Source of the DNA: Macrostomum lignano
Lineage: Eukaryota
Reading direction: 5' to 3'
NCBI GenBank assembly: GCA_002269645.1
Contig: NIVC01005046.1
Span: 1-27,900, forward strand
Length of the DNA stretch: 27,900 nt
Notes under the pieces: generated by a model
Told to the model about the DNA's origin: nothing
The model's input: only the letters and a program-made list of their open reading frames with translations
Databases searched by the model: none
Shown here: in pieces, positions 4,253 through 26,923 of the stretch
Position numbering within the stretch: the stretch's first letter is position 1
How the letters are laid out: each line of letters begins with the position of its first letter
Program-made: the position numbers and the translations under genes

Positions 4253-4277
4253 GTGGGTCCTGTGGCTGTTTGGGAAG

Positions 4278-5027: not shown

Positions 5028-5629
5028 GTCCTTAATTAACCTGAGATGTGCTTAAATCTGATTGAAGTACTTCGTAAACAAAGCATGCTTTATTATAGCT
5101 TTAATGTCAGCATTAATAGATTAGATGATTTCAAATCAGCTCTCGTGTTTGTTTTAATGATTCCATTCGATTTTTGGACTTCTTCACATGCCTAATTATA
5201 AAATTTTTTATTATTGATATAGTCACCACCTTAAATACTTATTTCGCATTACAATTTTTTATTAATATATAGTACTCTCCAAAAGCTTGCTGTGTTTTTT
5301 AAACATTTTATTCACTATTTACATCAATATATTGGTTATATTTTATTTTGTAGTAATCATGCATAATTATTATAGTTAGTTGTCACTATAGCCCCGATTT
5401 TTCGGCGAAGTTCTTTTTTATTCTACATACGAGTACACGCTACGTGCACAAGAATCTTCAGTAGGTGTTTAGTTATAATTTGTATACCGTCAAATATATT
5501 ATAGTGTGGAATCGTGGATGTTTTAATTGGAATATCCAGAAACTACTAAAAGTAGCCTGTTCTGTTTTTTTATTTCTTTTTTTCATATCTGAAATTTTTA
5601 TGTGCAATGCTTGAAATCTCTTAAGGGCT

Positions 5630-6437: not shown

Positions 6438-8129
6438 TACACCACTGTGTCATGTAAGATCGTGAATCCCTGGTGTAATCAGTAAATATTCGCCCGCTTA
6501 TTGTACATGTACGATCAGCCACTCTCTGATCCTCACCAGCTCAAGCTGGGGTCTTCTGTGACGCGGTTTTAATTGCGTCACCTGAGGGCTGATGAAGGTC
6601 TGAGAAAAGTTTACCGCACGTTTCGGGGTGCAGGAAATTTGAAATTTTTGCTGAGTTTATTGCATGTATATGCTCAGAGTCCAGAGGAATGGGCAAAACT
6701 GACTCAGTGCTCAGGGCAGAGTCCAGAGCGATAAATTCTTTAGTTTATATTTTCGGCTCCAGTTTTTTAGTTAGTCAGCAAAATAGAATTGTTTAATTCA
6801 ATGTGGCGACACGCATGCTAATCGAACAGAGATCTTCGATCTGATCTGTGGATATTGAGCTTTGTAACCATTGTCTTTGCCTAAAGCTCCTAATTCCGCA
6901 AGCACATAATCCTATAGTGCTTCAGCTCACCCTTGTGTGTAAAAATGGGCACTGAGGGCGTACATTTTTTGGGCGTTGTAGGACACTTACCCCTCCCTAT
7001 ATTGATTATTTTAAACTCAATTTTAAACTATATGTATATATTGAAGGAAAATGCTAGAACTAACGCAGGATCTGATCAAGACAAGGCTAGACTTGTTCAA
7101 CATACTTAAAAACTACAGTACAACAGATTGTGAGTTCACTTGCGCCTACTGAACAGTGAGCGGTAAGTTTTTGAACTTGATAATTTTTCAAAAATGTCAT
7201 CTCGAGCTACCTACTTTTGTTTTAATTGTGCTAGCCAAAGAGGTCTATTTTATGATTGATGTAAGAGAAACTTAGGGGTCAAAAAATTTTTTGTGTTTAT
7301 TCAATTTAGCCAATTAACTAGCTCCATATTTTATCTACAATTCGAACAAGATGAATGAGGCAGTCAAAAATAATCAGTCTTTCGCTCCTTTTTTGAGCGT
7401 TCCCGATGACTCTTTCCGTGACATGGGGGATACAGATCAGATATGTTTTATCTTGTTTAAAGTTACTTTTACTATAGTGCCAAACAAATGATTTGGCACT
7501 ATAGTAAAAGTAATTTTCATTTATCATTTTAATACTTTTTACTTTTTAAAACAGACAATTTTTAGTATTTAAGAGTTACGTTTTTTTGGTACGTCATAGT
7601 AACGTATAAAGTTGGAGTAAAAGTCACGTAGCTTCTTCTTTAAAGTTTATTTAAAAAATTGATTGAAAAGATAGTTTATCATGGCAACAGGGGACAAGTC
7701 TCAAAAAATACTTTTTGTTGACACAAAAAATAGTTTAGGTATCAGAGTTAAAAAATAATTAATTTCTCCGATTCTCTGTTGTAACCTGTGTTACATGTTC
7801 CTCACTTCTTTTTGAATTCTTACACTTACTTGAGTAGCTAAAATCTACGATGCCATGTACAGCTCAAAATTATTTACTTGGAACATATAACATGTCTATA
7901 TACAGTATAGATACATTTATAACAGAACGAGTCGAACTCCTCCTTTGGAGGAAAAAGGGGAAGAACTTCCATCACCGGAATTCTATTCCCTGAAATTCAT
8001 CGCTGAAATTCCATGTCTTGAACCCCATCTTCCTAATTGTCTCCAAATTCTTTACAAAACCTTTCAAATATATTGTCCATATATTGTTTTCCCTGTTTGC
8101 AAAAACTGACTACTATTGTCCAGACTCAG

Positions 8130-8995
8130 ACTCTCTAGTCTCCTTTCTCCTTTCTTCTCTCTCATCTCTCCCCTTTCATATCTCATCTCTTCTCACTTAT
8201 CTATGGTCTCTCCTCTACCCTCTCAGTCTTCTCTTTTCTGCCTCCGATACACTCTGACCCTCTCCTTTCTTATCTCCTATCCCATCCCATCTTTCTTCCC
8301 TCCTTTCTACCATCTCCTGTCTCCTCTGTTCTCTCTTTTCTCTCCTTTTCATTTTCTCTTCTCTCTTCTCCTTTCTCCTCTCATTTTCCGTCTTTTCTAT
8401 AATCTCTAATCTTTTCTCTCTCTTTTCTCACTCATTTCTTTTCTCATTGCATATCTAGTCTCTCCTCTCTGCACTCTCATCTTTATCCTCTTCTTTCTCC
8501 TCAGTGCTTTCTTCTCTAAATCTCTTAACTCTCTCATCTCTGATCTTTTAATCTCTCTTCTCTGTCCTTTCTCCCTTCCCCTCTCGCTTCTCTCACCTCT
8601 CTCCCCTCTCATCTCTACTACCTTATTTATATATTCTCCCTTGTCTTACGTCGTTACTCTCTACTCTTTATTACTCTTTACTCTCGCATCTTGCATCTCT
8701 CATCTCTCATCTTTTTTCTCTCCTATACTCTCTCCTCGCTTCTATTTCCTCTGTACGCTCTTATCCATCCTCTCTTTTCTTTCCTCTCATCTCTCCTGTC
8801 TCCTCTCTGCTATCTCATATCTCCCCTCTCATCTCCTCTCTCCTCCTCTCTCCCTCTTCATTCCCGCCTCCTCCCCTCCCCTCCCCTTTTCTCTCATCCC
8901 CCTTTCTCACCTATCTGTCATCTCTAATCCGTCCTCTCTCATATCTGCTTTCTTTTCTATCATCTCTCCTCTCTTCTCTTTACTCTCTTCTCTGA
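8130..8995. repeat. Pyrimidine-rich low-complexity (degenerate CT/TCTC) tract
   Basis: Plus strand is overwhelmingly C/T; ORFs here are S/L/F-rich artefacts. Confidence 0.9.
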
Positions 8996-9068
8996 CTGAT
9001 TTAATGTGCCAAATCAATCAAAATCCTCTTCGTGAAACAGAACTCCATCAAATTCTCTTCATAAGACT

Positions 9069-9288: not shown

Positions 9289-12200
9289 GTCTGTGCCTCT
9301 ACAACTGCCCCCGCCTGAGCCTTTCGATACTCAGAAAGAGCCACACAACCTCTCAGCACGGTGGGCAGAATGGGCCAACCGATTCAAGTGCTTTGTGACT
9401 GCAAGCGGCATAACAGATGCAAGTCAACAACGAGAGATTCTACTTTACGTCGGCGGCAAACAGGTGGCTGAAGCGTACGCAGAACTCACGAGGCCAGGCA
9501 AGACCCTCGAAGAGCTCCTGGACGCCCTCAAAGAGTACTTCAAGAGCAGACAACCCGGTATTCGTGCGATATGAATTCCGGCACTGCACGCAGCAGCCCG
9601 GCGAAGCCATCAACGCCTGGGTGCAACGGCTGTTCAAGGCTGCAGAAGGATGTGAATTCGAGACTCAGCGGGATCTCATCATCCGAGACCAAATTGTCGC
9701 CGGCTGCCAGTCAGACCAGCTCCGGCGCAGGTTGCTGCAGACACCCAATATCCAGCTCAAAGAAGCGCTGCAGCAAGCCAGGGCATTCGAGGCGGCCGAC
9801 CTTCAATCTGCAGTTATCGAAGCGCGGAAGAGCGAGTCTGTGAACGCAATGCGGCGTATCGAAAAGCCAGACCGACCGGAGCGAACCAGAACAAAGTGCA
9901 TCCGCTGTGGAGAGTCGGGCCACCGAACGTGCGAGGCGGCCAGAGGAAAGACGTGTCGGAACTGCAACAAGGTCGGCCACCTGGCAAAAGCGTGCTTGTC
10001 CAAACCCGCAAGCTCCAGAAAGGTGCACGCCATTGCCGAGGAGCAGCCGAGTGATCAGCAACAGCGAGACAGCGACAGCAGCTGCGAGGTGTTCTGCCTG
10101 ACGCCACAACGTAAGCGACTGCCGCTCGTTAAAGCAGACATCAACGGCCACGCCACAGACCTGCTAATCGATAGCGGCGCAAGCTGCAATCTAATGGACT
10201 CAAAAACATTCAAGGCCATCGGAGGCACGGCAGACGACCTTCGCGAGTCAAAGCAGCGGATCTTCCCGTTCGGCTCCAGTGAATCCCTCACCACTCTTGG
10301 CAAAGCGACCCTCCGGACCGCCGTTTATGACGTCAGCGCCAGCATTAGCTACATCATTGTCAAGGAGACGGGCACGACGATCGTGGGCCGCGAAACCAGC
10401 GAGAAGCTGGGAATCCTACGCATCGGACCAAGCAATCCCAGCGTCTGTCATCTGAAAGACTCTGGTGAGCTCCATGAGCCACTCAGCGCTGCATTGGCGG
10501 CCGCAGCGACGGAGGCAGACGATCAGGCAATGCCACAGCACGAGCGCCTCAGCAACATTATCAAGACTTTCAGGCAGCGATTTGTGGGAATTGGGTGCGT
10601 CAAGGACGTTGAAGTTGGCATCCACCTGCAAGACGGAGCCGTGCCGGTCTGCCATCCGCCAAGTCGCATCCCCGTGCATCTGCGAGAGGCTGCGCAGCGC
10701 GAGCTCGACGATCAACTGCAGGCTGGAATAATCGAGAAAGTGACCGGACCGTCCGAATGGGTGGCACGAATAGTTGTTGTCCCGAAGTCGCAGCCTGGCC
10801 AAGTGCGCATTACCCAAGATCTGCGAGATGTGAACAAGTTCGTAGTGCCCGAGAAACAGCCCATACCAACTTTTGAAGAGGTCACTGATGAAATGGCCGG
10901 TGCGCGCTACTTCACCGAGTTGGACATCAACAAGGCGTTTCACCAGATCCGCGTCCGAGAAGACTCGCGCCACCTGCTGACATTTTCGACGCCGAAGGGT
11001 CTCATGAGACTGACGCGCCTGTGCATGGGCTTTACGTCAGCGTCTGAGATTCTACAACGAGTCATGACCAGCGTGCTCGGCGGGCTTCCAGGAGTCCGCT
11101 GGGTACATGACGACATTATCATCTATGCAAGCTCCATCATTGAGCACAACCAGCGGCTAGCGGCAACCTTGCAAAGGCTAGAAGAGCACAACATCACCTT
11201 AAATCCGGCAAAGTGCAAGTTCGCCGTCAAGGAGGCCAAGTTTCTCGCTATGCGCCTGTCCGAGAAGGGCATCCAACCGACAGACGAGAAGGTGAGCGCT
11301 GTGAAAGCATTCAGAGCACCGAAAAACGCGTCCGAAGTGAGGTCCTTTCTCGGCCTTGTGGCTTTTGTCAGTCGCTTTATCCCAGCCCTGTCAGACATGG
11401 CCAAGCCCCTGCGAGATCTGACCAGAAAGGATGCGCCGTGGTCCTGGGGAGCAGCTGAGGAGACTGCTTTCAGCGCCATCAAGAACTCGATCTCCGCGAG
11501 AAGCACACTGGCATTCTTTGACAAGCGCAGACCCACAGAAGTGATCGTGGATGCCAGCCCGACGGGACTCGGAGCGATCCTCAGCCAACAGCAGCCAGAC
11601 GGCAGCTTGCGACCGATCGCCTACGCAAGCCGCGCACTGTCAGCGGTGGAGACGCGCTATTCTCAGACGGAAAGAGAAGCCCTCGCCGTCAAATTCGGTT
11701 GCCTTCGCTTCCGCCATTACCTCAGTGGTTCGTCCGGTTTCCGGGTCGTCACTGACCACAAGCCGCTGGTGCACCTATTTAAGCCAGGATCGCATCCGCC
11801 ACCAAGAATCGAGAGGATGGCACTGAGCATCCAGGACCTGGTGTTCGAGACAATGTACAGGCCAGGCTCGACCAATCCCAGTGACGTCCTAAGCCGGCAA
11901 ATCTTCCCAGCATCAGCGGTCTCCAGCGCAGGAGCAACCAGGGACAACCACTACATCAACAGCATTGCCGAGGACTCGACCCCAAAGGGACTGGCGCTGC
12001 AACAGCTTAAGGATGCAACAACGAGAGACGGAGCCCTCCAAGCAGCCATCTCAGCACTCCGAGGCGGCAAGTGGGATCTCCGAGAGGCTACCTTGCGGTC
12101 GCTGCACGCAGTCAAGCAGGAGCTCTCCGCAGCAGACGGAATCCTACTGAGAGGCCAGCGCATCGTCGTCCCCGAAGCGCTGCAGCTGACGGTGCTGCGG

Positions 12201-13265
12201 CTCGCTCACCAAGGACACCAGGGAGCAAAGAAGACGCAGGCGAGGTTATCGGCGAAGGTCTGGTGGCCCGGTATGGCAGGACAGGCGCAGCGGATGTGCA
12301 ACGTCTGCCTCCCGTGTCAAGCTGCGAGTCATCAGGCCGAAGTTCCAGCAGCGCCGCTGCAAGCCACACCACTGCCACCGCATGCCTGGCACACCCTGGG
12401 CATCGACTTCACCGGGCCAGTGCAAAACAAGCATCTACTCGTCATAGTTGACCATTTCTCCCGCTATCCGATAGTCATCAGCATGTCGGCCATGACAGCC
12501 GAGGCGGTCACCAAGCAGCTCCGGAAGCTATTCTCCACGTTCGGCAGACCAGCGCAGCTCGTCTCAGACAACGGGCCCCCGTTCAGCTCGCAAGCCTTCC
12601 ACGACTTCCTCCGCAGCAACGGCGTGCAGCACCGCTCCATCACTCCGTACCACCCGGCAGCAAATGGAGTCACCGAACGCATCAACCGCTCGATTAACAA
12701 GATCATCCGCATCGCAAGCATCGAGAAATCCGACTGGCGGGCCGCACTCGAAGACTGGCTGGAGGCCTACCGCAACACGCCACACAGCAGCACTGGAGCC
12801 ACCCCTGCGGAGCTGATGTTCCAGCGACAGGTGCAAGACTGCATCCCCAGCATGCGACAGCGCAGCCGAGTGCCCAGCACTTTGGCCGCGGTCAGGGCTC
12901 GCGACTGCGCCGCCAAACAACGGATGGCGCGCCATGCAGATGAGCGCCGAAGAGCCGCCAGCCACAACATCATGGCAGGCGACTCGGTGCTGCGCAGGCG
13001 GCGCCCTGCCTCCAAAATGCAGACACCCTTCGAGCCAGAGCCGTGGGTCGTCGAGGAGGTCAAAGGCGACTCCCTCATCCTGCGCAGAGCGCACGAGTCC
13101 TGCATGCGCCACATCACGGACCTCAAGCGCCTGCCGACGGCCGACTTCCCGCCACCGCCGCCCACGCCGCCACCGACCGAAGGCAGGCCGAAGTCACCCG
13201 AGTCCATTGCGCTGCGGGCTCACCCACGTGCGTGTAAAAGCCGACCAATGAGTTTAAACCACTGA
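9287..13265 (+). CDS. Gag-Pol polyprotein (one frameshift inside gag near 9545-9552)
   Basis: ATG at 9287. Two knuckles CIRCGESGHRTC and CRNCNKVGHLAKAC; protease LIDSGAS; RT FTELDINKAFHQI and WVHDDIII; RNase H VDAS/TEREAL/TDHKPL; integrase zinc finger H..H..C..C and IDF/SDNG/NGVTER. Confidence 0.95.
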
Positions 13266-13420: not shown

Positions 13421-13700
13421 ATATTCGAAACTAATGCTCGTATTTATATTCGCAAACTAATGCTCGTATTTATATTCGCAAACTAATGCTCGTATTTATA
13501 TTCGCAAACTAATGCTCGTATTTATATTCGCAAACTAATGCTCGTATTTATATTCGCAAACTAATGCTCGTATTTATTTTCGCAAACTAATGCTCGTATT
13601 TATATTCGCAAACTAATGCTCGTATTTATATTCGCAAACTAATGCTCGTATTTATTTTCGCAAACTAATGCTCGTATTTATATTCGCAAACTAATGCTCG
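13421..13700. repeat. 26-bp tandem array (AACTAATGCTCGTATTTATATTCGCA) in the retrotransposon 3' UTR
   Basis: CTAATGCTCG recurs every 26 nt at 13431, 13457 ... 13691 (11 starts), then degenerate copies to about 13745. Confidence 0.97.
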
Positions 13701-13918
13701 TGTCTATTTTCATAAGTAATGCTCATTTGATCGTAACTAATGCTTAAACTCTTATCCATGCTCATATTTGTGTTTATGCCCTAATGAATATTCGCTCTCA
13801 CATCCGTATATTTTCATACTATTCACTCACATCCATTCCCCTCTGATTCCCACTTCGAAATGTTTACTTAGCTTCCCATTTGCTCTTATCTCCTAACTCT
13901 TATCCGCTTGGGGAAGGA

Positions 13919-14885: not shown

Positions 14886-17587
14886 ATGAACATTAAAGAC
14901 TTAAATGAAGTTGAATGTCACACAAAATGGTTTGCCAAGTTTGACATCATTGAAGAACGTGTCAAGAAAGTTTTAGACGACCTTGAATCGGAAAAGTCTG
15001 ACTCACCATGGCTGTCAGATCTCTACCTGCTCTTGAAAGCTAATCTCCGGACAATGCCGATGTTCTGTGATTTAGGCAAAGCGTGGAAGTTGTTAAGTGA
15101 AACAGAAAGGGAAGTTCCAGCATTGATTAACGTACAGTTTCTGGTCAAAGCAACAAAACTTAGGCTTATGGAGATGGAATCGAGACCGGGAAGTCCATCA
15201 GGACAAACGTATGACGAGGCAAAGCAATATTTAGAGGACTTCTCGGCTCATGAGCTAACAAAAGCAACTTGCTTGGTTGTCAAATGCTGGACAATGCGAT
15301 GGTTCGCCGTCGGGCCCCATAGGAAAGCCATAATAAAGGACTGTGAATATGCTCTTCAAGATGCCAAACAGATTCTGGACACTACGAAAAAGATTCCTGA
15401 AAATCCAGAGTCCCAGGCCGTTAAGTTTTTATGCCTGTACAACTCGCATTGGTTCTCAATGAACAGCGAAATGAAAAACTTTTCATTTGTCGTGAAGAGC
15501 TCCAGCATTGGGAAGAGGCCAAGAGTATATTGGATGAACAGAAGTGGCAAGATGTGATGTTTCTAGCCGATTTTGCGAGGGCAGTCGCTTCAACACCGAC
15601 GCATTCGAAATTATGTAAAAATCTGTTAAAAGCTACAGAGGATTGGACAGAAACTACAAGGACAAACAGAACAGATGGCAATGAAAACAGGTCAAAACCG
15701 TATCGAATGTACATCGCGTTGCCAGAAGTTTATTCGACTCTGATCAGACGTCTGAACAGAATGGGAAAGGACAAAAATGAAGTTGAGACTTTTAGCGAAA
15801 AGATCAGAAGCATACTTGAACAGGGCAACGAAATCGAAAAATGTAGAAATCACCCTTCCTTCATTGCTGCAAAGGTAGGACAATTTCTATTTGATTCACG
15901 AGTAAATGAAGCAGAAGACCTACTAAACGAGAGTATTTTCGGAAATGAATACTGGTTAGAATTGAAACGAATTCAAGTGCTACTCAGGAAGCCGAAAGAA
16001 GATGTCGACATTCAATCAAGTCTCCGTCTATTCGAGACGCTCTGCACCAACTTTCCGAACAAAGAAGCGATTATCCGAATGGACAAGGGCATTTTTCTTT
16101 TGAAGCACGGTGATGTCAAGAGAGGTATGGAAAATCTCATCTGGGCCAATAACGACTATTTGCATCCTGCCTATAGAAACAATGGGTTTATAATGCAATA
16201 TCTAAGAGAAATCCAAGCTGCAGTAGCAGAAGAAGAACATTATCTGATTTGGATTGAAAGTCAGTTTGAAACTGATTCGGAAACATATCACGTAGGAAAG
16301 TCAATAAAAAAGTACCAGAACTACCAGCCATTGTCCGATGAGCAGAAGCACTTTGTCAACGAGCACCTCGGCCGGCTGCTGATGCGTAAGTCGCAGTTCG
16401 AAGAGGCCGAGCAGCTGTTCCGCTCACTGCCTGAGTCCGTGCAGCACAGAACTGCAATGATCGCTGACTCTCTCCTCTGCCAAGCGGAGAGCTTGTCGAG
16501 CGGAGATGACGTCAAAGAGGTGTGCAAGGACAAGCTAGCCAAGATGCAAGCGGAGAGCTTGTCGAGCGGAGATGACGTCAACGAGGTGTGCAAGGACAAG
16601 CTAGCCAAGATGCAAGCGGAGAGCTTGTCGAGCGGAGATGACGTCAACGAGGTGTGGAAGGACAAGCTACCCAATAAAATGCGGCTGCACCTGCTAAACG
16701 AGTGCGCCTCACTCGGCTGCAAGGACTCCGTACACGAGGCACTGCTGCTGCTGGAAGAAGACATTCGGAAACAGAGCGACAGAAACAACGTGTTGCAAGT
16801 GAATGCGGACCCCTTGTTCCTGCACAGCACATGCGTCTATGAGTTTTGCGCCCGACTGACTGAGCTGAAGAACGCCGGCTTTCACATCAAACGACGTCGC
16901 ACAGCTCCTGAAGATGAAGAAGGCATAACAGAGAAAATGTCCGACCTGCTGAAGAAGGTGAAGGAAATTCTATGTCAGCAATCCTACCCAAGGAAGCTAA
17001 GGTTAAAAATGACTAGATTGATTCTAAAAGAATCACAAGAAAAAGACGTCTACTGGCGCAGTATGTGGCTCACACTGGATGAGCTTAGAAAAGAACTGGA
17101 TAGAATTTGGCACGACTTCATTGCAGCGGCTCGAAATAACCCCATAAATAAAAAGGTAGATGTTAGTTGTTGGAAATGTCCTGTTTATTATCCGCTAACC
17201 CATGACCAGAGAAATGCAAATACAAGTGCTGAGAAGGCTCTTGAGGGTAAATGGAAATTGAGTTATAATAAAAAAGAGAATAGAAAGTTTGACGACAATC
17301 CTGATGTGCAGTTTCCTCTTGCACCAAGAAGCACTCATTACATTTTTAAATGGATGGCTCAGAAGGAGACAGCGATTGGGGAAAACGGAAACTGGCTAGA
17401 GCTTTGGAGCAGTAAAATCAACCAAGACAAACATAAAACTGCTGTTGAACTGAGAAAATTGAACTCGGATATCGAGAAAAAATTTCAAGAGTCAAATACT
17501 CGTAAAGGCCCAGCCAACTTGCAGCAGCTGGCGCACTTTGCAGCAGAGTTCGTAGAGGAGGTCAGATTCGTACTTTTGTCTTATAAG
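14886..17587 (+). CDS. Exon 1 of a ~1430-aa protein: IFIT-like TPR region, 3x22-aa repeat and HEPN-like domain (one -1 frameshift between 15431 and 15557)
   Basis: ATG at 14886. Track ORFs 14865-15557 and 15431-17596 join if one base is restored (e.g. an A in the run at 15469-15471). Donor AAG|GTAAGT at 17588, phase 0. IFIT-like motifs LNEVECHTKW, PENPES, LSDEQKHFVNEHLGRL. HEPN-like LDELRKELDRIW / VYYP / WLELWSSKINQDKH. Confidence 0.75.
16481..16669 (+). repeat. In-frame 66-bp tandem repeat (~2.9 copies; QAESLSSGDDVxEVCKDKLAKM)
   Basis: Units start at 16481, 16547 and 16613 and are nearly identical. Confidence 0.97.
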
Positions 17588-17921
17588 GTAAGTTAGACCG
17601 ATGAGCAATTGATTTCCTGAATATATTCCCACGAAGCCTACTATTTTATCCTAGGCTAGTAGACTAGTGGACTAAGGATCACTTACATCTACTATGAAAT
17701 ATCCATCTAGAAATCTTGTCTACAAACCAGCTCTTGAGAATCTAACTGATTGTGCAGGTTTGCTAGTTTGTGCAAAGTCCTCCAAACATCTGTTCTGTCC
17801 TTTTATTCCTTAGCATCCCGGCCTGTGTTTCGCACTTAATTCGCGCTAGTAAAAACATCTCACACTCATCCTGAGGAGAGTTTTCGAACTCCCAATGCAC
17901 TAATTTATCCATTTGTTTCAG

Positions 17922-18576
17922 TACAAAGAAGTCAGCGGCTTTCCAATGAAGTTCGAAGCCTTGAAGTCCGACTATGATTGGAAATGGGCCTGCTACAAAT
18001 GCGCTACTGGGTTCGATGCACTTCGCAGCAGATTCGAAGAGCCTTCAGAACAATGCACGGACTGTCAGCAGGTCATTCTGCTGGTTCGTGACAAAAACGC
18101 TGTCAGTGGCAGCAAGTGGCAGCACATCAGGCCCAGACGCCGAAAGCTGATCAAGCTTGAAATGTGCTTCAAGTACAGCGACATTCCTGACTGCAACGAA
18201 TGCATGCGCGCCCACTGCGACTCCGCGCATGGCGAGGCTGAATACCGGCTGTGGGAACTGGAGAGGATCGGCAAGTTCTCTTTCAACAGATTCATGAAGC
18301 AGCATCGCAATGCTCAAACGGAGCTGCCTCTGGTCATCTGCGAAAGGGCTGGCGAGAGCGGTGTGAGACAGATATTTTACACTGGCCCTCCTGGCCCTCC
18401 AGAAACTCAAACTCTTGCTAGACTGCCTCCCACTGAGACTAAGAATAACCGGTTTGCAAGGCTGTGTGAAAAATTCTCTCGAGGCATACCCTGTCCTTTT
18501 TGGCGAGATGGAAAATGCTACTACGCCCACTGCGCCGAGGAGGAACAACTGTGGAACATTATGAAAAAACCAAGAG
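17922..18576 (+). CDS. Exon 2: CxxC..CxxC plus two CCCH-type zinc fingers (ZC3H7/RoXaN/HELZ-like module 1)
   Basis: Acceptor TTTGTTTCAG ends at 17921 (phase 0, matching the 17588 donor); donor AGAG|GTAAGG at 18577 (phase 1). CYKC-x17-CTDC, ILLVR...WQHIRPR, C..C..C.SAHGEAE..LWELER, C-x8-C-x7-C-x3-H. Confidence 0.85.
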
Positions 18577-18698
18577 GTAAGGGCAGTTTCAGGATTGAGA
18601 GCAACCTTGGGAATCAACTGGTGGTCCCATCAGCTAGGCTTGGCTGAGCTGGAAGGTGCTCATGATCATAGTTACCCCATCACTAATAAATATTTCAG

Positions 18699-19334
18699 AA
18701 GACTGGCCAGCTGGACTGAGAGAGCTTATCGACAAGATTAAGCCTGGATTGACTGGTTGGATCCTGCAGTTTCATTGTGACTGGAAGCTGGTCTGCTACA
18801 AGTGCGCCAATTCGAGTGATGCACTGCAGAGCAAGTTCTCAATGAATGCGGCTACAACCGAATGTAAGAACTGTGAGCAGTGCTTCCTTTTGGTCAGAGA
18901 GAAGAGCAGCGCAGTCAGCAATGAGTGGCAGCGAGTCCGACTCAAAATGCGGAATCTGAGTAAGTGCCATAATTATGGACGGCGTGGAGAATGCAGGTAC
19001 TCAGACTGCGACTTTGCCCACGGAGATTTGGAGCTGAAGATGTGGCAACTGGAGAGGACCCAAAAGTTCTCATTCGACCAGTTTCTAAAAGACAATCGCA
19101 CAGCTGCGTCAGAACTGCCGCTGATTCTCCGCGAGCTGCCAGCAGGCTCTGCGAGTCGCATTGTGTACGCGGGCCCAGAGCAACGGCCCGCTAGACTACC
19201 GCCACCAAAATGCAACAAGGCCCAGCTTTGTAAAAGTATTTTTGAAAAAGAGGATTGCCGCTACAGAAATAATTGCAATTTTGCTCATTGTGCCGAGGAG
19301 GAGCAGTTGTGGAACATCATGAAAAGTCGCGGAG
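18699..19334 (+). CDS. Exon 3: second copy of the same zinc-finger module
   Basis: CACTAAT branch point at 18681 and acceptor TATTTCAG ending at 18698 (phase 1); donor GGAG|GTAAAT at 19335 (phase 1). CYKC-x19-CKNC, C-x8-C-x4-C-x3-H and canonical C-x8-C-x5-C-x3-H. Confidence 0.87.
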
Positions 19335-19675
19335 GTAAATTCCTGGTCTTCATTTGATCCTTCAAATTTGTAACTAAAAACTAAAGTACTTAGCAAAAGA
19401 TTGGTTCGAGTACTGGCTCGACAGCATATCCCTTCAGATGTCCCACGGTTTGCAGTAATTATCCGATGGTTGGGTTTCGGATTTGTCTTGACTGGGGACG
19501 TTGCTAATGCCTGCAAGATACTTGAATCGAAGGGTGGGCGTAGTCTTTGTTGCCTGACTGTTTCACCAACCTACTTGGTTCAGGCTTCAGTAAATTCTGA
19601 AAAGACGAACAGACTCCGCGTGTTCTTGAGTAAATATGCAAGTAAAATTTACTAAATTTTATTCGATATTTCCAG

Positions 19676-19980
19676 ATATTCCCAGCGCTCTGCAAGCTCT
19701 TATTAAAAAACTGGAAGAAACAACTAGCAGAAACAGCGACTCCAGGCTCCAGGAGAATTGCACAGCTGGTTCGAGTTATACACGCCAGGTAGCAGCTCCG
19801 AGCCAACCCAATGCGCAGAGCTCCAATAGCGGAAGTTCTGCCAGCCAATCCACACGGATTAAAAAAAGGGCCACAGACTGTGGAGACAAAAAAGGAGTCA
19901 AAAGGAGTCAAGAAAGACCTCAGGAGTCAAAAAAAGCTCAGAATCGGTTTCAAGCACTGTCTGACGATGCTGAAGGCTAA
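19676..19980 (+). CDS. Exon 4: low-complexity S/Q/K-rich tail, stop TAA at 19978-19980
   Basis: TACTAAA branch-like motif near 19650 and acceptor TATTTCCAG ending at 19675; phase 1 matches the 19335 donor and the frame of track ORF 19636-19980. Confidence 0.7.
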
Positions 19981-21164
19981 CACATATTTATCATTCATTT
20001 TTCACGACTTTATTTAATCAGATTTTTCAATTAAGTTCTATAAATTTGCTCTTTTAATTTTTGCACTCTGCAGTTATTCAAAATGTGTGTGTACTTCGGG
20101 TATTAGTCATTAACAATGTCACCGTCCTCGTTAAGTAACTAGAGAGAAAACTGACAATTAAGTCAATGAATCCATTAGTATCAATGAGCCGATGGCAATT
20201 CAGCTTCGGGGCTTAATAATAGTAATATTTGCAGGAGGGCTGTGGGCCTTTGACACATCATTTTGTGACGTCAGGCAGTGTACATTCTCTCTGTGCCTTG
20301 GAGGTTGGCCCTCATGAGCGTAAATTGCACGAAAAGCCCCCAAATCTTCTCTCCACGGCTGCGCCTCAAATTAGTGTGGCCTCTCCGCGGAATCGAGCTC
20401 AGGGACGGTGGTGCGAGAGGCAAAACGCATTAGACCGTTCTGCCACTCATCCCCAGCGTCGGGACTTAGCTGAAACTCACTCTGCGAAGAAGAGGTAGCA
20501 GAGTTTCACTTATGACACACCTGAAGTGCATATCGCTTTAGAAATTCACTTCTCTTTGAAACATAAGAACACTTGAGAATAAGAATCATTTGGTTATCAT
20601 GCTTTATTATTATAACACGTAGCTAGCCGCGTAGTGTAATTTCGTTAATTGCTAACTGTTCTCTTAACTTGACATGGTACATGATCATATATTTCCCGAC
20701 TGTGCTTTACTTACTCGCTTGAGTATTTGATTTGCCAGGTGAAGTGAAACGAAAGCAGTGGATATATCTTGGGCTGTTTTCTGCTGCTCTTTGCATTTGA
20801 TTTGAGTAAACTAACCACTGAGTACTTACTAAGTACGCTCGTACTAAGAAATCAGTTTGTTTATTACCTTAAAATGCGATATAATACCATTATCATGAAA
20901 TTCTATTTAGCAAACCTTTTTTGCCGCAGTAGTACTGACTTTTTATTTTAGCTGCGATTCATAACGTACGAAATGTGATATTATTATAATATCGTATATT
21001 ACTCTTGCAGAAATTTTTCTATTGATTTTTTAACCCCAATAAATATTAATATATTAATTTGCGTTTGAAAAAAGTTAACATTTTTCGACCATTTGTTATC
21101 AAAACGTAAATTGTTGAAATGTTTTTTTGCCTTCGCATACAGTTTACTGTTGTGCATTCTGCAC

Positions 21165-21845
21165 TGGCGGCACTGGCGTGGTGGTGCTGGTAGTGCTGGT
21201 GGTAGTGATGGTGCTGGTGCTGGTATTAGGGGTTGTGCTGGTGGTGCTAGTAATGGTGCTGGTGGTGCTGGGTAGTGCTAGTGCTGGTGGTAGTGGTGGT
21301 GGTGTTGGTGGTAGTGCTGGTGGTGTGGTGGTTAGTGCTGGTGGTGCTGGTGGTTAGTGCTGGTGGTGCTGGTGGTAGTGCTGGTGGTGCTGGTGGTTAG
21401 TGCTGGTGGTGCTGGTGGTTAGTGCTGGTGGTGCTGGTGTTAGTGCTGGTGGTGCTGGTGGTAGTGCTGGTGGTGCTGGTGGTTAGTGCTGGTGATGCTG
21501 GTGGTTAGTGCTGGTGGTGCTGGTGGTTAGTGCTGGTGGTGCTGGTGGTTAGTGCTGGTGATGCTGGTGGTTAGTGCTGGTGATGCTGGTGGTTAGTGCT
21601 GGTGGTGCTGGTGGTAGTGCTGGTGGTGCTGGTGGTTAGTGCTGGTGATGCTGGTGGTTAGTGCTGGTGGTGCTGGTGGTTAGTGCTGGTGGTGCTGGTG
21701 GTTAGTGCTGGTGATGCTCGTGGTTAGTGCTGGTGGTGCTGGTGGTTAGTGCTGGTGGTGCTGGTGGTTAGTGCTGGTGGTTAGTGCTGGTGGTGTTGGT
21801 GGCGCAGCTGGTGGTTATAGTGCTGGTGGTGCTGGTGCTGGTGCC
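21165..21845. repeat. GGT/GCT-rich minisatellite with a homogeneous 22-bp core (GTTAGTGCTGGTGGTGCTGGTG) and degenerate triplet-like flanks
   Basis: Direct periodicity. Confidence 0.95.
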
Positions 21846-22984
21846 TTGCGAGCAAGTGGCGTTGGGTTCTAGCCCAGTACGGTGACGATAGCCTTTAGAC
21901 CCGGCCCGTGCGGAGCTGGGCGAGAAAAAGCAGCGGCGGCTTGGCTGTTGGTCTTGTTCGGACGCGTGCCTCTGCTGGCTTTGCGGTGTGGGTTGCGCTG
22001 TGGGGGTCAGAGGCGTACGGGCGGTCAGGCTGAGCGTGCTGCCTGGAGGCTCACTGCCCAGGAGGTAATATCCAGGAGGTCGCGCCAGCTCCCGGGTTTC
22101 TTGTCAGTTGTCACTGAGCCGAAACTCGTAATCGTTGTATTTATCTATTAATAGTTACTTATAAATATTCCATTTTTGGTGTGTGCCAGAATAATCTCAA
22201 AGCAGTTTTTCAGCATTTGCAACGACATCAGAAATATAGCAGCTCATGGCAGCTTTTCAATTACTCTGCTATTATTCTCATATCAGCTAAGACACAATCT
22301 CAGGCCGCTGCTTGTAGTCTCAGACTGAATGAGTTGATGAATGCAAGGAGGCGACGAGTAAATTAATATTCAAATCATTAGATCATCTGTGGTCTCCAGA
22401 CACTTCAGCGAACATGTTTTTCAATTTTGTTTTGAAAGCCAGCTTGTCTTTAGTTAACTTCTTCTAAGCCCAGCCAGTCACGAAAAGCAAAACGTTTTGA
22501 CCATAGAGCATTTCCTAAGTTTTTATTTAAATTACCGTGTCTCATTGGAATGACAGTTAAACCCCTTAAAGTTGCATTGCCAGGCCAGGCTGTTGTGCTA
22601 TGCAAAAATTGCTGTCAATGCAAAACTCGGAAACATATCAATTGAGTCCTGTCAGTTCAATAAGCATTCTGTTTTTAGGCGTCGAATCGCGGCGCAGAGC
22701 AAAGCGTGAATTCAAACTGACAGCTCGCTATTTCATTATTCCCAAACCAAAAGTAAAATCAAGAAAAAACTTCAAACCTAATATGAAAATATCTATAAAT
22801 ACGTCTTGACTCATCTAACACATGAACCACTAGATGTACAGCAGTAGGAAAACTCCAGTCCATGGACTCAGGGCAAAAATTAAGCTAACCTTAACCTAAA
22901 AAGCATACGCGACTGTAAAAAGTTGTGTCTAGCATAAAAGTGCAATATTCGAAGGCGCAAGACAGGCAGGCTTTAGGAAAAAAT

Positions 22985-23157: not shown

Positions 23158-26100
23158 AAGGGCTAAAACACCAACAGTGTACATTCAAGTCACGATAGAG
23201 CAGAGACGTGCAAAGAGCGTGAGACCAGACACAGGGCGCACGCACAGGGTTAAAATCACAAACGATACGCAGAGTAAAAGCGCACGCCCAACCCCCAGGC
23301 ACCAGGCCCAACACTGCCCCCGCAAAAGCAAACGAAGACTGAAACCAGTAGAAAAAAATCAGAGTCAAGTACAGTCACAAAGAGTCACTAGTCTTTATAG
23401 CAGACCGGCTGGCGCGGCCGAAGCTCGTACGGTTCCCTCCGGCCGCTGGTCAGGGGCGCTGCCGTTGGTTCCGGATCAGAGAGTTGCTCAACCTTGGCGT
23501 CAGGAAGCTGCTCCCGCAACTCCGACTCAGGTTCGGCCCCCTAAAGCGACCCAGGCGCACTCATCCGGCCGGTTCACTGATTCGAGTGCGCCATGCAGCC
23601 GCAGGCCGCCGTCCGATTGGTCCGCAGGGGCTACCAGCGCCGTGTTCGGCCCTGCTGCACCACGTACTTGGCCGGAACCGGCGAGCATCCCGGACGCATC
23701 CTCAGCAAGATTGGATCGCCCACCTGCTCAGTCATGTTTAGGCGACGACCCCACATCAGAATGTCCGGAGATGCCGCTCGATTTCCACTGGGCCGGCTGG
23801 TCCTGATCGTCAGCAGCAGTTTCTGCAGAAAGTGGTCGAACGGCACCATTATTGTCCACGCCTTGAGTCCATCCTTGATGATCCTCACCAGCCTTTTTGT
23901 CTGACCGTTCGAGACCGGATGGAGTGTGCAGCTCCTGGAACCCGATGCTGTGCAGCCACTGGGACACTCTCTCTGACTTGAACTCCGGCGCATTGTCCGA
24001 CATCAGCGTCCGAGGCACTCCGTTCCTGGCGAACACCGCTCTCAGAACCCACAGGACACTGTCCGCAGTTCGGTCTGGCACCTGGATGGCCTCAGGCCAC
24101 CCCGAGTAGGAGTCCGACAGCAGCAGTAGCAGGCCGACTCCAGATATCTCACAATGGTCCATGTGAACCGGGGACCACGGCTCACTCTCTGCTGGCCAGG
24201 TGTCGATTCTCCGCTGCAGGACTGGCCGAGTTTCTGAGCACTGCTGGCAGCGCTCCACAAAGCTGCGAACATCGCGATCGAGACCCGGCCACCAGAACTC
24301 CTTGGAGATGTGCGCCTTGGTGTTGTCGGCACTCGGATGCACCTCGTCGTGCGCCACCTCCAGAATGCGCCTGCGGAGATCAGGTGGCGGCACAATTCTG
24401 GTTCCGTGGATCACCAGACCATCTTCCACCGACAGCGCCTCCCGGCACGCTTTGTACGGCCTCTCCACCTTCGACACCTGGCCCCACCGGCCCGTTCGGA
24501 TCCTCTGCTGCAGCCGCTTCATCAACGCGCACATCCTGGTTCCGTCACGAAGATCCTGCAGAGTCATCAGAGCTCCTTCTGACACGACCTCTTCATACTC
24601 CAGCTGGTGCACAGCGTCACTCGGAGGGTCTTGGGCAGCAAAACTCAAAGGAGACAAGGCATCCGCATCCACCATCAGTCTTCCTGGCACATACTCCACC
24701 TCGTAGTCAAAAGCAGATAGTCGCAGTGCCCAGCGAGTTAGTCTTGCCGACACTGTTTTAGGAAGATCCTTGCTGGGATTGAAGATGTACTTCAGTGGTT
24801 CGTGGTCAGTCTGCAGCGTGAACCTCTTCCCCAGAAGCATCTTGTGGGCTCGCTCCACCGCCCAAACAATGGCCAGTGCCTCCCTCTCAATGTTGGAGTA
24901 ATTGGCCTCAGACTTGGTCAGCGCCCGAGAGAGGTACATGACTGGGTGTCCTGACTGCACCAGCACAGCGCCCAGCGACTGCTCGCTAGCATCCACCCGC
25001 AGACACACCGGCGAGTTGACGTCAAACGGTTTCACACACGGATTCGAGCTCAGGCTCTGCTTCACATTGGTGAACGCTGCCTCGGCAGCCGCACTCCAGT
25101 CAAACACACGGTCCGCTCGACGAAGTTCCTGCAGAGGCCGACACTTCTCAGCAAAGTTGGGAACCAATCGACCGTAGAACTGCGCAAGTCCCAGAAACCG
25201 CTCGAGATCCTTCTTGCTTTTCGGAGCCTCCACATCCTGAATCTTCTGCACCATTCCCGGATCCGGCTTGATCCCCTCTTCATCGATGATGTGGCCCAGG
25301 AACTTCAAGATAATTGGCCTCCAAAATGCACTTCGCTTCGTTGATTTTCCCATTAGCCGTCCTCAGCTTGTCCAGCACCTTCTCTCTGATATTCTGCAGC
25401 TCCGCTTTCGACACCGCTCCCATGAGTACATCGTCCTGGTGCACGATGACACTTGGGTGCTCACCCAGCAGCGAGCTGAGCAGATCCCGGCCGAGCAACC
25501 CGAACTTCTGCTCGCATTCGATGACGGGCAGCTCCGCCGCAGCGAAGCGGCCATCAGGGCCGCCAGTCTCCACCAGGCACTCCAGGATGCCGAGCTGCTT
25601 CATTACGTGCCCGTCGTTGGCCAGCATCCGAGACTTGGGCGACTTCAGGGGCGGCCTGCCGAGTTCTTCCCAGATCTTTCTCGAGATCAGTGAGCACGAG
25701 GCTCCGCTGTCCTTTTCCATTTTGACCTGCCTTCTGTTGATTTTCACATCACAGAATGCAGCACGGGTGCCCGCACCGCAGTAGAAAACCGGCTCGTCTC
25801 TGGTCACGGCTGAGTCAGAGTGCTTGGATTCTTTGGGTGCGACAAAGTGGGTCCTGGCACTCCGGCAGACCTTCGCGAAGTGGCCAGTCTTGCCGCACTT
25901 GTGGCACGTAACCTTCAGAGCCCGGCAGTCTGTCGGGTCGGCGATGTGGCGCCTGGCCGCATCGCTGGCAGCTCTGGCCTCCACTGGCCCTGGGCCTCAC
26001 CATCTCCGCCGCATTCACGCTGTTGGCACCTGCAGAACTTTCTTCTGGCACCTCCTGGCTAGCGGGCAGCGCCTGATGCACCGCCGAGTCCACTTCAGCT

Positions 26101-26923
26101 TGGTCGGAGGCGGTCAGTTGCCCAGACGATAATTTGCTGACCATCTGAAGTTGCTGCACGTACTCGTGATCTGGCTCACAGAGAGCTCTGCCGAGACTTC
26201 GCGCTCGAGGACCTTGCTCCGAACCTCCTGGTTGCTGAGACCGGCGATGAGACGCATTTTGATCAGTTTCTCAGCTGGATCGACGTTCTCGCCCTTCAGC
26301 TTCTCGAATTCGCACACCTCCGCCTGCTCTCGAAGTCGGGCAGCGAAGCCCGCAACCGTTTCGCCCTTTCCTTGGCGCATGGACATGAAAACCGCTCGCT
26401 CGGCAATCAGCAGCCTCTTCTTGGGTTCCAGAAACCGTACGAGACACTCCTTGATTTCCGCCCACTTCATCTGCGAGAGCGGTTTGGGCGCGACCAGCTG
26501 CTTCACTTTGATGAGCTGTGCCACGCCAAGGCAGCCAAGGAAGGCATCGGTCAACGCCAGATTGCCGGCTGTGTGATCAGTGCGATCGTTGTCCTTTACT
26601 CCTTTTGACCGTGCCTGGGCGTCGAAGACCTCGATCCATGCCCGCAACTCTTCAATGTTGTTGAGAGGCAGTGGGTCTCGTAGCTTTATGGACATCTGAT
26701 GATTCCTGCTTGCGACGCCAAAATGTTGGTCAGTGCAAGTGGAGAGCAAAGAGTTTGCGAGGCGAAACGAAAGTGCCAAGGGCACTGACAAACGATACGA
26801 TTTATTATAAGCGAGGTTCAATAGCAGCCCCCCCAACCAAGGGCTAAAACACCAACAGTGTACATTCAAGTCACGATAGAGCGGAGACGTGCAAAGAGCG
26901 TGAGACCAGACAAAGGGCGCCAG
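23158..26923 (-). mobile_element. Decayed Ty3/Gypsy (Mag-like) LTR retrotransposon with both LTRs incomplete in this window
   Basis: 82-bp direct repeat 23158-23239 / 26839-26920 (2 mismatches). The 3' LTR starts TGTTGG at 23313 after PPT-like GCGGGGGCAG. The 5' LTR ends CCAACA at 26724, with AATAAA at 26805-26800. PBS TGGCGTCGCAAGCAGGAATC at 26720-26701. Confidence 0.9.
23631..26695 (-). pseudogene. Disrupted gag-pol of the second element
   Basis: ATG at 26695. Knuckles CQRCGQAPH.. and CHKCGKTGHFAKVC; protease DSGASCS...LLGRDLL fused directly to RT motif C (IVHQDD); RNase H VDAS/IEREAL/TDHEPL; integrase HHCC, MDH, SDNAP, SNGQTKR. At least four frame breaks between track ORFs. Confidence 0.92.

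What the first reader, a model, noticed from the sequence alone, without database searches (positions are those of the whole stretch)
14886..19980. One spliced ~1430-aa protein: IFIT-like TPR + HEPN-like RNase + 2x ZC3H7-type zinc-finger modules (candidate RNA sensor-nuclease fusion)
Seen: five separately listed ORFs join through three phase-compatible GT-AG introns (17588-17921 phase 0, 18577-18698 phase 1, 19335-19675 phase 1). With one base restored in exon 1 the total is 4299 nt = 1433 codons. Recalled knowledge: the N-terminal motifs match vertebrate IFITs, i.e. LNEVECHTKW vs IFIT1 LEQLRCHFTW, IPENPES vs IFIT1 DPENPES, and LSDEQKHFVNEHLGRL vs IFIT5 ITDDHKHQIHYHYGRF. IFITs bind 5'-triphosphate/cap0 viral RNA ends and have no catalytic domain. 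HEPN domains are RNases in RNase L, Cas13/Csm6 and bacterial abortive-infection toxins; CCCH fingers bind RNA. Inference: a single-chain antiviral or anti-TE effector that senses non-self RNA ends and cuts RNA. I know of no described protein with this architecture.
Basis: partly seen in the sequence, partly recalled or inferred. Interest (0 to 1): 0.92.

Follow-up and report, generated by a model that had tools for sequence, protein, structure and literature searches.

The report
Flatworm TPR plus zinc-finger RNA-binding gene
This is a real four-exon gene of the flatworm Macrostomum lignano, already in public databases as an unnamed fragment, that encodes a large probable RNA-binding protein (helical repeats with an IFIT-like start, two zinc-finger modules), but nothing I could test supports the claimed RNA-cutting (HEPN) domain, and this copy has a one-base frame break.

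Summary
Five ORFs at 14886-19980 join through three canonical GT-AG introns (phases 0, 1, 1) into a 4298-nt coding sequence that needs one more base. All three junctions are reproduced exactly by a public Macrostomum lignano protein model (UniProt A0A1I8ILS8, 100% identical over most of its length) and by protein continuity in paralogs.

- **IFIT-like:** the signal is real but confined to the first ~180 residues. It is carried mainly by a paralog (PAA92423.1), whose four best PDB hits are all IFITs (IFIT5 E=7e-4). The window copy keeps only the L.E.ECH..W motif. The rest is generic TPR.
- **Zinc fingers:** the two modules are 41% identical to each other. Each is a four-cysteine zinc ribbon plus two CCCH fingers. 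Similarity to ZC3H7A is weak (E=0.024).
- **HEPN:** not supported. The family invariant is N-x2-K-H with no conserved arginine. There is no Pfam, PADLOC or PDB sequence hit. The structure models were too poor to decide.

Paralogs replace the zinc fingers with RGG repeats, which points to RNA binding rather than cleavage. The family appears Macrostomum-specific and undescribed in the searchable literature. Interest is moderate.

The parts
14886..15430 (+). Exon 1, first reading frame (model residues 1-182). This is the IFIT-like N-terminus: LNEVECHTKW at residues 6-15 and IPENPES at residues 170-176.
   Evidence: BLASTP to the P0004 N-terminus gives E=1e-5, N-terminally anchored. The family profile against the IFIT N-terminal profile gives hhalign probability 90.7%.
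15425..15494 (+). Interval that must contain the 1-nt frame disruption. Candidate homopolymers are T5 15426-15430, A5 15474-15478 and T4 15480-15483.
   Evidence: Frame 2 opens after the TAA at 15422-15424. The phmmer alignment to P0004 starts at ORF residue 22, about nt 15494. Homopolymers are listed. P0004 has no intron at this position.
15431..16480 (+). Exon 1, second frame: the remainder of the TPR-like helical solenoid (residues 183-532), including the LSDEQKHFVNEHLGRL motif.
   Evidence: phmmer to P0004 gives E=1.3e-9. P0004 has TPR_2, TPR_8, TPR_14 and TPR_19 above the Pfam cut-offs. The AF2 model is all-helical. Foldseek returns TPR solenoids.
16481..16674 (+). In-frame 66-nt x 2.9 tandem repeat (AESLSSGDDVNEVCKDKLAKMQ) in the linker.
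   Evidence: Paralogs P0002 and P0007 have a single copy.
16673..17587 (+). Family-specific helical 'middle' domain (residues 597-901).
   Evidence: Alignments A2 and A5. No known family or fold matched.
17588..17921 (+). Intron 1 (334 nt, phase 0, GTAAGT...TTTCAG).
   Evidence: The junction is identical in P0011.
17922..18576 (+). Exon 2: zinc-finger module 1 (CxxC-x17-CxxC ribbon, CCCH finger 1, linker, CCCH finger 2, AEEEQLWNI).
18577..18698 (+). Intron 2 (122 nt, phase 1, GTAAGG...TTTCAG).
18699..19334 (+). Exon 3: zinc-finger module 2, 41% identical to module 1.
   Evidence: E=1e-48. zf-CCCH scores 20.1 bits against a cut-off of 20.5. P0001 is 95% identical.
19335..19675 (+). Intron 3 (341 nt, phase 1, GTAAAT...TTCCAG).
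   Evidence: The junction SRG|DIPSAL is present in P0001 and P0011.
19676..19980 (+). Exon 4: Ser/Gln-rich tail with a basic cluster (RIKKRATDCGDKKGVKR). The stop codon is at 19978-19980. A TATAAA lies at 20039.

Best explanation
**What it is.** The region is a four-exon protein-coding gene of the free-living flatworm Macrostomum lignano. It belongs to a small, fast-diverging gene family found so far only in Macrostomum.

**Domain order.**
- About 530 residues of TPR-type helical repeats, whose first ~180 residues descend from, or closely resemble, the N-terminal subdomain of vertebrate IFITs.
- A short repeat-expanded linker.
- A family-specific helical domain of about 300 residues and unknown fold.
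- Two tandem copies of a ~200-residue module, each a four-cysteine zinc ribbon plus two CCCH fingers.
- A basic, serine-rich tail.

**Most likely mechanism (inferred).** It is an RNA-binding adaptor. The zinc-finger modules bind RNA; in paralogs RGG repeats sit in the same position. The TPR solenoid and the helical domain hold RNA ends or partner proteins. RNA fate would then be decided by sequestration, or by recruited decay and translation-repression machinery, as for IFIT, ZAP and ZC3H7A/B. An intrinsic nuclease is not indicated.

**Biological role (speculative).** A role in antiviral or anti-transposon defence is plausible from the IFIT-like start, the lineage-specific expansion and the domain swapping.

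**State of this copy.** It carries a single-base frame disruption in exon 1. That is either a homopolymer assembly error or a very recent inactivation.

**Shown:** the gene structure, the paralogy, the zinc-ligand conservation and the IFIT-like N-terminus in the family. **Inferred:** RNA binding, adaptor function and a defence role.
For: **Gene model.** The exons, phases and junctions are confirmed, and the junctions match public model P0011 exactly.

**Organism and family.** All relatives are from M. lignano. An exhaustive HMMER search of 1.84 billion representatives with the 721-aa ORF found only 4 real hits.

**IFIT-like N-terminus.** P0004 residues 1-188 give four best PDB hits that are all IFITs: IFIT5 E=7.1e-4 (7-181 vs 13-181), IFIT2 0.019, mouse IFIT2 0.14 and IFIT1 0.6. 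The window N-terminus is homologous to P0004 (E=1e-5). Profile-profile comparison gives 90.7% probability over 135 columns.

**TPR.** P0004 passes the Pfam cut-offs. The structure model is all-helical and matches TPR solenoids.

**Zinc-finger modules.**
- The internal duplication scores E=1e-48.
- The invariant ligands are C9, C12, C30 and C33 of the ribbon, plus the CCCH ligands.
- There are weak hits to TTP, ZC3H7A and Roquin fingers.
- UniProt labels this locus and its paralogs 'C3H1-type domain-containing'.

**C-terminal swap.** P0004 and P0005 carry RGG repeats after the same middle domain.

**Precedent for adaptor action.** ZC3H7A/B (TPR + IDR + zinc fingers) recruit CCR4-NOT and GIGYF2/4EHP (bioRxiv 10.1101/2025.04.21.649502).
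Against: - No expression data were available, so neither transcription nor the junctions in this exact copy were seen directly.
- The window's own N-terminus is too diverged to hit IFITs by itself.
- IFIT similarity does not extend past about residue 180.
- IFIT triphosphate-pocket residues could not be shown to be conserved.
- The middle domain has invariant polar residues (N846, K849, H850, H884, E888, E891, E892), which could form an unrecognised active site.
- Both structure models were low-confidence (pLDDT 52.6 and 43.9), so fold-level statements are weak.
- The frame break may mean this copy makes no full-length protein.
Confidence: 0.6

Rival explanations
1. One reading: a single-chain sensor-nuclease. 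The IFIT-like clamp senses non-self RNA 5' ends, and a HEPN domain (catalytic H850, codon at 17432) cuts the RNA.
For: H850 is invariant in the family and sits in an N-x2-K-H motif. That motif recalls the N-x3-H part of the RNase L / Ire1 'RNxxxH' motif (the motif comparison is from my own knowledge). A second invariant histidine and an acidic cluster (H884, E888, E891, E892) follow. TPR + HEPN + Zn-ribbon fusions do exist in animals, in the DZIP3-like HEPN family (PMC3710099).
Against: - The defining arginine of Rx4-6H is absent in all five family members.
- No HEPN model in Pfam or PADLOC and no HEPN/KEN structure sequence was hit, even at E<=10.
- Foldseek on the middle-domain model gave nothing (best E=3.6), although the model was unusable at pLDDT 43.9.
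- The motif is predicted to lie in the middle of a long helix, not at the start of a helix.
Confidence: 0.08
2. This copy is a pseudogene. The exon-1 frameshift is real, so no full-length protein is made. At most an N-terminally truncated product could start at ATG 15431.
For: The frame break is present in the sequence. M. lignano is a hidden polyploid with many near-identical copies (abstract of PMC10468722), and a 95%-identical second copy exists (P0001). The locus lies among retrotransposons and minisatellites. The public model for this locus omits the N-terminus.
Against: It is the only lesion in 4.3 kb. Every other exon frame is open and all splice sites are canonical. The permitted interval contains T5 and A5 runs, the classic sites of long-read indel errors (the error-site point is from my own knowledge).
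Confidence: 0.35
3. It is a divergent ZC3H7-like post-transcriptional regulator (TPR + CCCH modules that recruit decay or repression complexes). The IFIT resemblance would then be a short shared or convergent N-terminal motif on a generic TPR array, with no immune role.
For: The overall order TPR - linker - several CCCH fingers matches ZC3H7A/B. The middle CCCH finger with its 'AHG-x-x-EL-x-x-WE-x-R' extension aligns to the ZC3H7A finger in PDB 2D9M. Beyond residue 180 only generic TPR similarity is detected.
Against: The 2D9M hit is not significant (E=0.024) and TTP scores slightly better. ZC3H7A/B are reported as chordate-only. The N-terminal hits are specifically IFITs, not other TPR proteins. 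The ~300-residue conserved middle domain has no counterpart that I know of in ZC3H7.
Confidence: 0.2
4. There is no frameshift. A 47-nt GT..AG mini-intron (15420-15466, phase 0) joins the two frames, giving a 1416-aa protein.
For: GT at 15420-15421 and AG at 15465-15466 restore the frame exactly.
Against: - The other three introns are 122-341 nt, and the average M. lignano intron is over 1 kb (PMC5730564).
- Paralog P0004 encodes its homologous region in one continuous exon.
- The excised stretch aligns to a retained helix in P0004.
- There is no polypyrimidine tract before the AG.
Confidence: 0.05

Closest known systems
Vertebrate IFIT1/IFIT2/IFIT5 (interferon-induced proteins with tetratricopeptide repeats)
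   Same: Both have an N-terminally anchored L-x-x-L-x-C-H-F-T-W motif, followed collinearly by LAYL, G-x-N, CL-x-x-A and a P-E/D-N-P-E turn at about residue 171. This is seen in paralog P0004 and partly in the window copy. Both are all-TPR solenoids of about 500 residues encoded in one long exon.
   Different: - Similarity is detectable only for about 180 residues and only via the paralog.
- IFITs have no zinc fingers and no extra C-terminal domains.
- IFIT genes have a first exon holding just ATG plus 2 nt (PMC3688568), which is not the case here.
- IFITs are reported to begin in jawed vertebrates.
- RNA-pocket residues are not demonstrably conserved.
ZC3H7A / ZC3H7B (RoXaN)
   Same: Both have an N-terminal TPR region, a linker and several CCCH fingers, and ZC3H7A/B are cytoplasmic RNA-binding adaptors. 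The middle finger and its ELxxWExR extension align to the ZC3H7A finger in 2D9M.
   Different: The match is not significant (E=0.024). ZC3H7 has about three TPRs, no IFIT-like N-terminus and, as far as I know, no equivalent of the conserved helical middle domain. It is said to be chordate-specific. From memory, ZC3H7A carries 'W-K-K-I-R-P-R-P ... CCCH ... W-x-L-E-R-x-G-x-F-S' modules much like those here. That is a lead only and was not tested.
ZAP (ZC3HAV1) and other CCCH antiviral RNA binders
   Same: Both have clustered CCCH fingers embedded in a larger RNA-binding module and, as far as tested, no intrinsic nuclease. ZAP acts by recruiting cofactors (own knowledge).
   Different: No sequence hit to ZAP structures was obtained. 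ZAP has no TPR region.
DZIP3/hRUL138-like HEPN proteins of animals
   Same: They show lineage-specific expansions and fusions of a helical domain to TPR and Zn-ribbon modules (PMC3710099). If the HEPN reading were right, this would be the natural home of the gene.
   Different: No match to the HEPN_DZIP3 model or any other HEPN model was found, and the Rx4-6H motif is absent.

Membership tests
IFIT | N-terminal subdomain with the CHFTW motif and sequence similarity to IFIT N-termini | tested here: inconclusive
   Paralog P0004 has the exact CHFTW motif, and its four best PDB hits are all IFITs (IFIT5 E=7.1e-4). The family profile against the IFIT profile gives 90.7% probability. The window copy itself has ECHTKW, no PDB hit and only a 13-residue match (E=0.041).
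IFIT | IFIT-specific similarity along the whole ~470-residue TPR clamp | tested here: not met
   P0004 residues 189-545 and the two-sequence profile hit only designed consensus TPRs, with no IFIT at E<=10. In Foldseek, IFIT2 ranks 21st and IFIT1 33rd among generic solenoids, with TM-scores below 0.2 on a low-confidence model.
IFIT | Conserved 5'-triphosphate/cap pocket residues | not testable with these tools
   The alignment in that region is too uncertain. By the hhalign register only window E24 matches IFIT5 E33 (the residue list is from my own knowledge).
IFIT | Gene structure: first exon carries only ATG plus 2 nt, with the rest of the CDS in exon 2 (PMC3688568) | tested here: not met
   ATG 14886 lies inside the long exon and no donor follows ATG+2. 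The rule is quoted.
IFIT | Induction by virus or interferon-type signalling | not testable with these tools
   No expression data were accessible.
HEPN RNase superfamily | Conserved Rx4-6H motif | tested here: not met
   The invariant residues are N846, K849 and H850. The residue 4-6 positions before H850 is K/I, L/V, S/V or E/V, never a conserved R. The second invariant histidine (H884) also has no conserved R upstream.
HEPN RNase superfamily | Match to a HEPN family profile or to the sequence of a solved HEPN/KEN structure | tested here: not met
   Pfam on the window protein, its segments and four paralogs, PADLOC and PDB profile searches returned no HEPN, KEN, Las1 or Csm6/Cas13 hit.
HEPN RNase superfamily | Four-helix up-and-down bundle fold | tested here: inconclusive
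   The AF2 model of residues 597-901 has pLDDT 43.9 and pTM 0.30. The best Foldseek E-value is 3.6. The family has too few sequences for a reliable model.
CCCH (C3H1) zinc fingers | C-x7-9-C-x4-6-C-x3-H ligand pattern, conserved across copies | tested here: met
   Both fingers of both modules, and those of the paralog modules, keep the terminal Cys and His ligands, with compatible upstream cysteines. Pfam zf-CCCH scores 20.1 bits against a cut-off of 20.5. UniProt names the locus 'C3H1-type domain-containing protein'.
ZC3H7A/B | Significant sequence similarity of the finger modules to ZC3H7 | tested here: inconclusive
   Only the 69-residue finger of PDB 2D9M was available. It scores E=0.024 and aligns CCCH plus AHGxxELxxWExR.
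ZC3H7A/B | Orthology (reciprocal best match, shared TPR type) | not testable with these tools
   No ZC3H7 full-length sequences could be fetched. The literature says ZC3H7A/B are chordate-only.

The most novel reading that the evidence does not exclude
The Macrostomum family is a genuine protostome relative of the IFITs, which would move IFIT origins back to early bilaterians. In it, an IFIT-type RNA-end clamp has been fused to ZC3H7/ZAP-like zinc-finger modules and to a previously unrecognised conserved helical domain. That domain's invariant N-x2-K-H / A-H-x-A-x-E-F-x-E-E residues would form a new effector site, possibly nucleolytic. The protein would then be a one-chain antiviral or anti-transposon RNA sensor-effector.
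Probability: 0.1. Interest if true: 0.8.

Novelty: new variant of a known kind. Interest (0 to 1): 0.4.

Why it matters
- IFITs are held to be a jawed-vertebrate invention (PMC3688568), and ZC3H7A/B a chordate one (bioRxiv 10.1101/2025.04.21.649502).
- A flatworm family combines an IFIT-like N-terminus with CCCH modules that may be ZC3H7-like. It suggests that the building blocks of vertebrate RNA-directed innate immunity and mRNA surveillance are older, or more freely recombined, than assumed.
- M. lignano is a transgenic, RNAi-amenable model in which this can be tested.
- The conserved ~300-residue middle domain has no detectable relatives and is a candidate new domain.
- The headline claim of an IFIT-HEPN nuclease fusion is not supported, and the evidence for the IFIT link is modest.

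Tried and rejected
- **Whole-protein word-index search**: it found nothing, not even the locus's own public model. The long query saturated the candidate list. Searching exon 3 alone found P0001.
- **Profile search with alignment A2**: it returned only P0002.
- **The look-up of encoding contigs for P0001**: not on record.
- **AlphaFold2 of the exon-1 product and of the middle domain**: pLDDT 52.6 and 43.9, because only 5 family sequences exist. The Foldseek results therefore carry little weight.
- **PDB profile searches with A2 and A5**: only spurious lysine/glutamate-rich ribosomal-protein hits.
- **PADLOC**: nothing.
- **Metagenome scan with the zinc-finger module**: 312 pattern matches, none confirmed.
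- **Rfam and tRNA scans**: nothing.
- **Literature searches** for invertebrate IFITs, Macrostomum + IFIT, and the gene identifiers: no description of this family.
- **The 47-nt mini-intron:** considered and rejected as the explanation of the frame break.
- **The public model's in-frame 396-nt 'intron'** (16958-17353): considered and rejected as the main isoform, because that stretch is conserved coding sequence in all paralogs.
- **A ZC3H7A sequence recalled from memory:** I did not run a comparison against it, because that would not be a test.

Full report
**Context.** The window is eukaryotic and repeat-rich.
- It contains many minisatellites.
- It carries an intact Ty3/gypsy-type pol ORF at 9417-13265 and a broken retroelement on the minus strand at 23728-26869.
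- AMP deaminase exons lie at 727-4225.
- Every protein relative found is from the flatworm Macrostomum lignano. One public model (P0011, UniProt A0A1I8ILS8) is 100% identical to window exons. The window is therefore M. lignano DNA.

**Observation.**
- The exons 14886-17587, 17922-18576, 18699-19334 and 19676-19980 sum to 4298 nt. Adding one base gives 4299 nt, which is 1432 codons plus a stop.
- The three introns have canonical GTAAGT/GTAAGG/GTAAAT donors and pyrimidine-rich ...CAG acceptors.
- Their lengths are 334, 122 and 341 nt, none a multiple of three. They carry 8, 5 and 9 in-frame stops, and their GC content is lower than that of the exons. The phases 0, 1 and 1 are right.
- P0011 contains exactly the junction peptides SYK|YKEVSG, KKPR|EDWPAG and KSRG|DIPSAL. 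Paralog models P0002, P0003/P0007 and P0001 run continuously across the homologous points. The spliced gene is not a chance pattern.

**The frame break.** Frame 2 opens only after the TAA at 15422-15424, and frame 0 closes at 15557. Homology to paralog P0004 in frame 2 is detectable from about nt 15494.
- The lesion therefore lies in 15425-15494. The only homopolymers there are T5 15426-15430, A5 15474-15478 and T4 15480-15483.
- A 47-nt GT..AG stretch (15420-15466) would also restore the frame. However, P0004 encodes residues 1-1036 in one uninterrupted exon, and the excised stretch aligns with a retained helix in P0004. I favour a one-base indel.
- These data cannot tell whether it is an assembly error or a recent inactivation. 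It is the only lesion in 4.3 kb.

**The family.** An exhaustive HMMER scan of 1.84 billion representative proteins with the 721-aa ORF gave four real hits, all from M. lignano.
- P0002 is 59% identical.
- P0003/P0007 have the same architecture with two zinc-finger modules.
- P0004 (PAA92423.1) has the TPR region and the same middle domain, followed by RGG repeats.
- P0005 (PAA78669.1) has the middle domain followed by RGG repeats.
- P0001 is a 95%-identical second copy.
- A merged public model (P0010) joins P0004 to an AMP deaminase, so the family neighbours AMP deaminase genes at more than one locus.
- I found no paper that mentions these genes.

**Is the N-terminus IFIT-like?**
- Pfam and PDB sequence searches with the window protein itself find nothing beyond sub-threshold TPR hits.
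- The paralog P0004 starts MSNLEKLEELECHFTW and passes the Pfam TPR cut-offs.
- Its first 188 residues, searched against all PDB sequences, give four best hits that are all IFITs: IFIT5 E=7.1e-4, IFIT2 0.019, mouse IFIT2 0.14 and IFIT1 0.6. The alignments are anchored at the N-terminus and collinear to residue 181.
- The window N-terminus aligns to P0004's with E=1e-5, also N-terminally anchored.
- A two-sequence family profile matches an IFIT N-terminal profile with hhalign probability 90.7% over 135 columns. The window sequence alone matches only through the 13-residue L.E.ECH..W motif.
- Past residue ~180, only designed consensus TPRs are hit and no IFIT appears.
- Foldseek with a low-confidence model lists generic solenoids, with IFIT2 and IFIT1 at ranks 21 and 33.
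The H-x-GR[LF] match has no statistical support.

I conclude that the family has an IFIT-like N-terminal subdomain, while the window copy is a diverged member. Membership in the IFIT family is not established. The typical IFIT exon structure is absent, and the literature places IFIT origin in jawed vertebrates.

**Is the middle region HEPN?** Alignment of the five family members shows a conserved core at the end of exon 1, W837, W841, N846, K849, H850 ... A883, H884, A886, E888, F889, E891, E892.
- No arginine is conserved 4-6 residues upstream of either invariant histidine, so the defining Rx4-6H motif is not met.
- No HEPN, KEN or other nuclease family appears in Pfam for the window protein or the paralogs, in PADLOC, or in PDB profile searches.
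- AlphaFold2 of the domain was unusable (pLDDT 43.9), and Foldseek found nothing.
- Animal TPR + HEPN + Zn-ribbon fusions are known in the DZIP3-like family (PMC3710099). The idea was therefore reasonable, but nothing here supports it.

The domain remains of unknown fold and function.

**The zinc-finger modules.** Exons 2 and 3 each encode one module, and the two are 41% identical (E=1e-48).
- Five module copies from the window and its paralogs share invariant CxxC...CxxC ribbon ligands, an LLVR..K...WQ..R stretch and a first CCCH finger followed by EL..W.LER..K.SF.
- They also share a Y.GP...ARLP linker and a second CCCH finger followed by the invariant AHCAEEEQLWNI.
- A profile of the module hits TTP (E=0.0098), a C3H1-type domain protein (PDB 9y10, 0.015), a cytoplasmic zinc-finger protein (PDB 6nzl, 0.021), the ZC3H7A finger 2D9M (0.024, including the AHG..EL..WE.R extension), BRF2 and Roquin.
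- Pfam zf-CCCH is just under its cut-off, and UniProt labels the locus C3H1-type.

CCCH identity is secure. 'ZC3H7-type' is a plausible but untested lead.

**Mechanism.** The same TPR + middle-domain chassis carries zinc-finger modules in some paralogs and RGG repeats in others. Both are classical RNA-binding elements (own knowledge), so the C-terminal position is most simply an RNA-binding slot. With no detectable catalytic domain, the best-supported model is an RNA-binding adaptor. It would work like IFIT (sequestration of RNA ends), ZAP, or ZC3H7A/B (recruitment of CCR4-NOT and GIGYF2/4EHP). Several features fit a conflict-related role but would fit other fast-evolving functions too:
- restriction to one lineage;
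- 23-59% identity between paralogs within one species;
- C-terminal domain swapping;
- an in-frame minisatellite in the linker.

**Verdict.** The gene is already present, unnamed and truncated, in public annotation. The architecture is a new variant on known TPR-plus-CCCH RNA binders with an IFIT-like start. The HEPN nuclease, which drove the original high score, is not supported. Interest is moderate (0.4).

Noticed in passing
window 9417-13265 (+): An intact 1282-aa Ty3/gypsy-type polyprotein ORF with RVT_1, RT_RNaseH, Integrase_H2C2 and rve domains, plus CCHC knuckles and a protease motif readable in the translation. It is possibly a young, active retrotransposon sitting between the AMP deaminase gene and the gene of interest.
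   Followed up: partly
window 23728-26869 (-): A second LTR-retroelement, broken into several ORFs: a gag-like ORF at 26114-26869, an aspartyl protease at 25280-25984, and RNase H plus integrase at 23728-25353. The RT part is missing or degraded.
   Followed up: partly
window 727-4225 (+): AMP deaminase exons. The last exon, 3827-4225, matches PF19326 at E=9e-61. One intron is filled by a 28-nt x 50 minisatellite (2250-3706). A public merged model (A0A1I8JIK7) fuses a paralog of the studied gene with another AMP deaminase copy, so the two gene families are neighbours at more than one locus.
   Followed up: partly
window 16481-16674 (+): A 66-nt x 2.9 tandem repeat, 97% identical between copies, lies in frame inside exon 1 (AESLSSGDDVNEVCKDKLAKMQ). 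Paralogs have one copy, so this is a recent coding minisatellite expansion in the linker.
   Followed up: partly
window 16958-17353 (+): The public model A0A1I8ILS8 splices out this in-frame 396-nt stretch (GTGAAG...CTCAG). All paralogs keep homologous coding sequence there, so it is either a mis-prediction or an alternative isoform that removes part of the middle domain.
   Followed up: partly
window 17916-18227 vs 16295-17584 (paralog P0002): Paralog P0002 is 94% identical to window exon 2 but only 56% and 35% identical to parts of exon 1. This suggests gene conversion or exon exchange between paralogs, or a chimeric public gene model.
   Followed up: no
window 7-665, 1334-1726, 4271-4897, 5625-6436, 13421-13701, 21178-21844: An unusually dense set of minisatellites with 20-44-nt units and up to 50 copies. 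Some have extreme strand skew; the 8001-9000 and 21001-22000 bins show GC skew of -0.78 and +0.53.
   Followed up: no
window 15431 (+): An ATG opens the downstream frame immediately after the T5 run. Even if the frameshift is real, a product lacking the IFIT-like first 182 residues could in principle be made.
   Followed up: no
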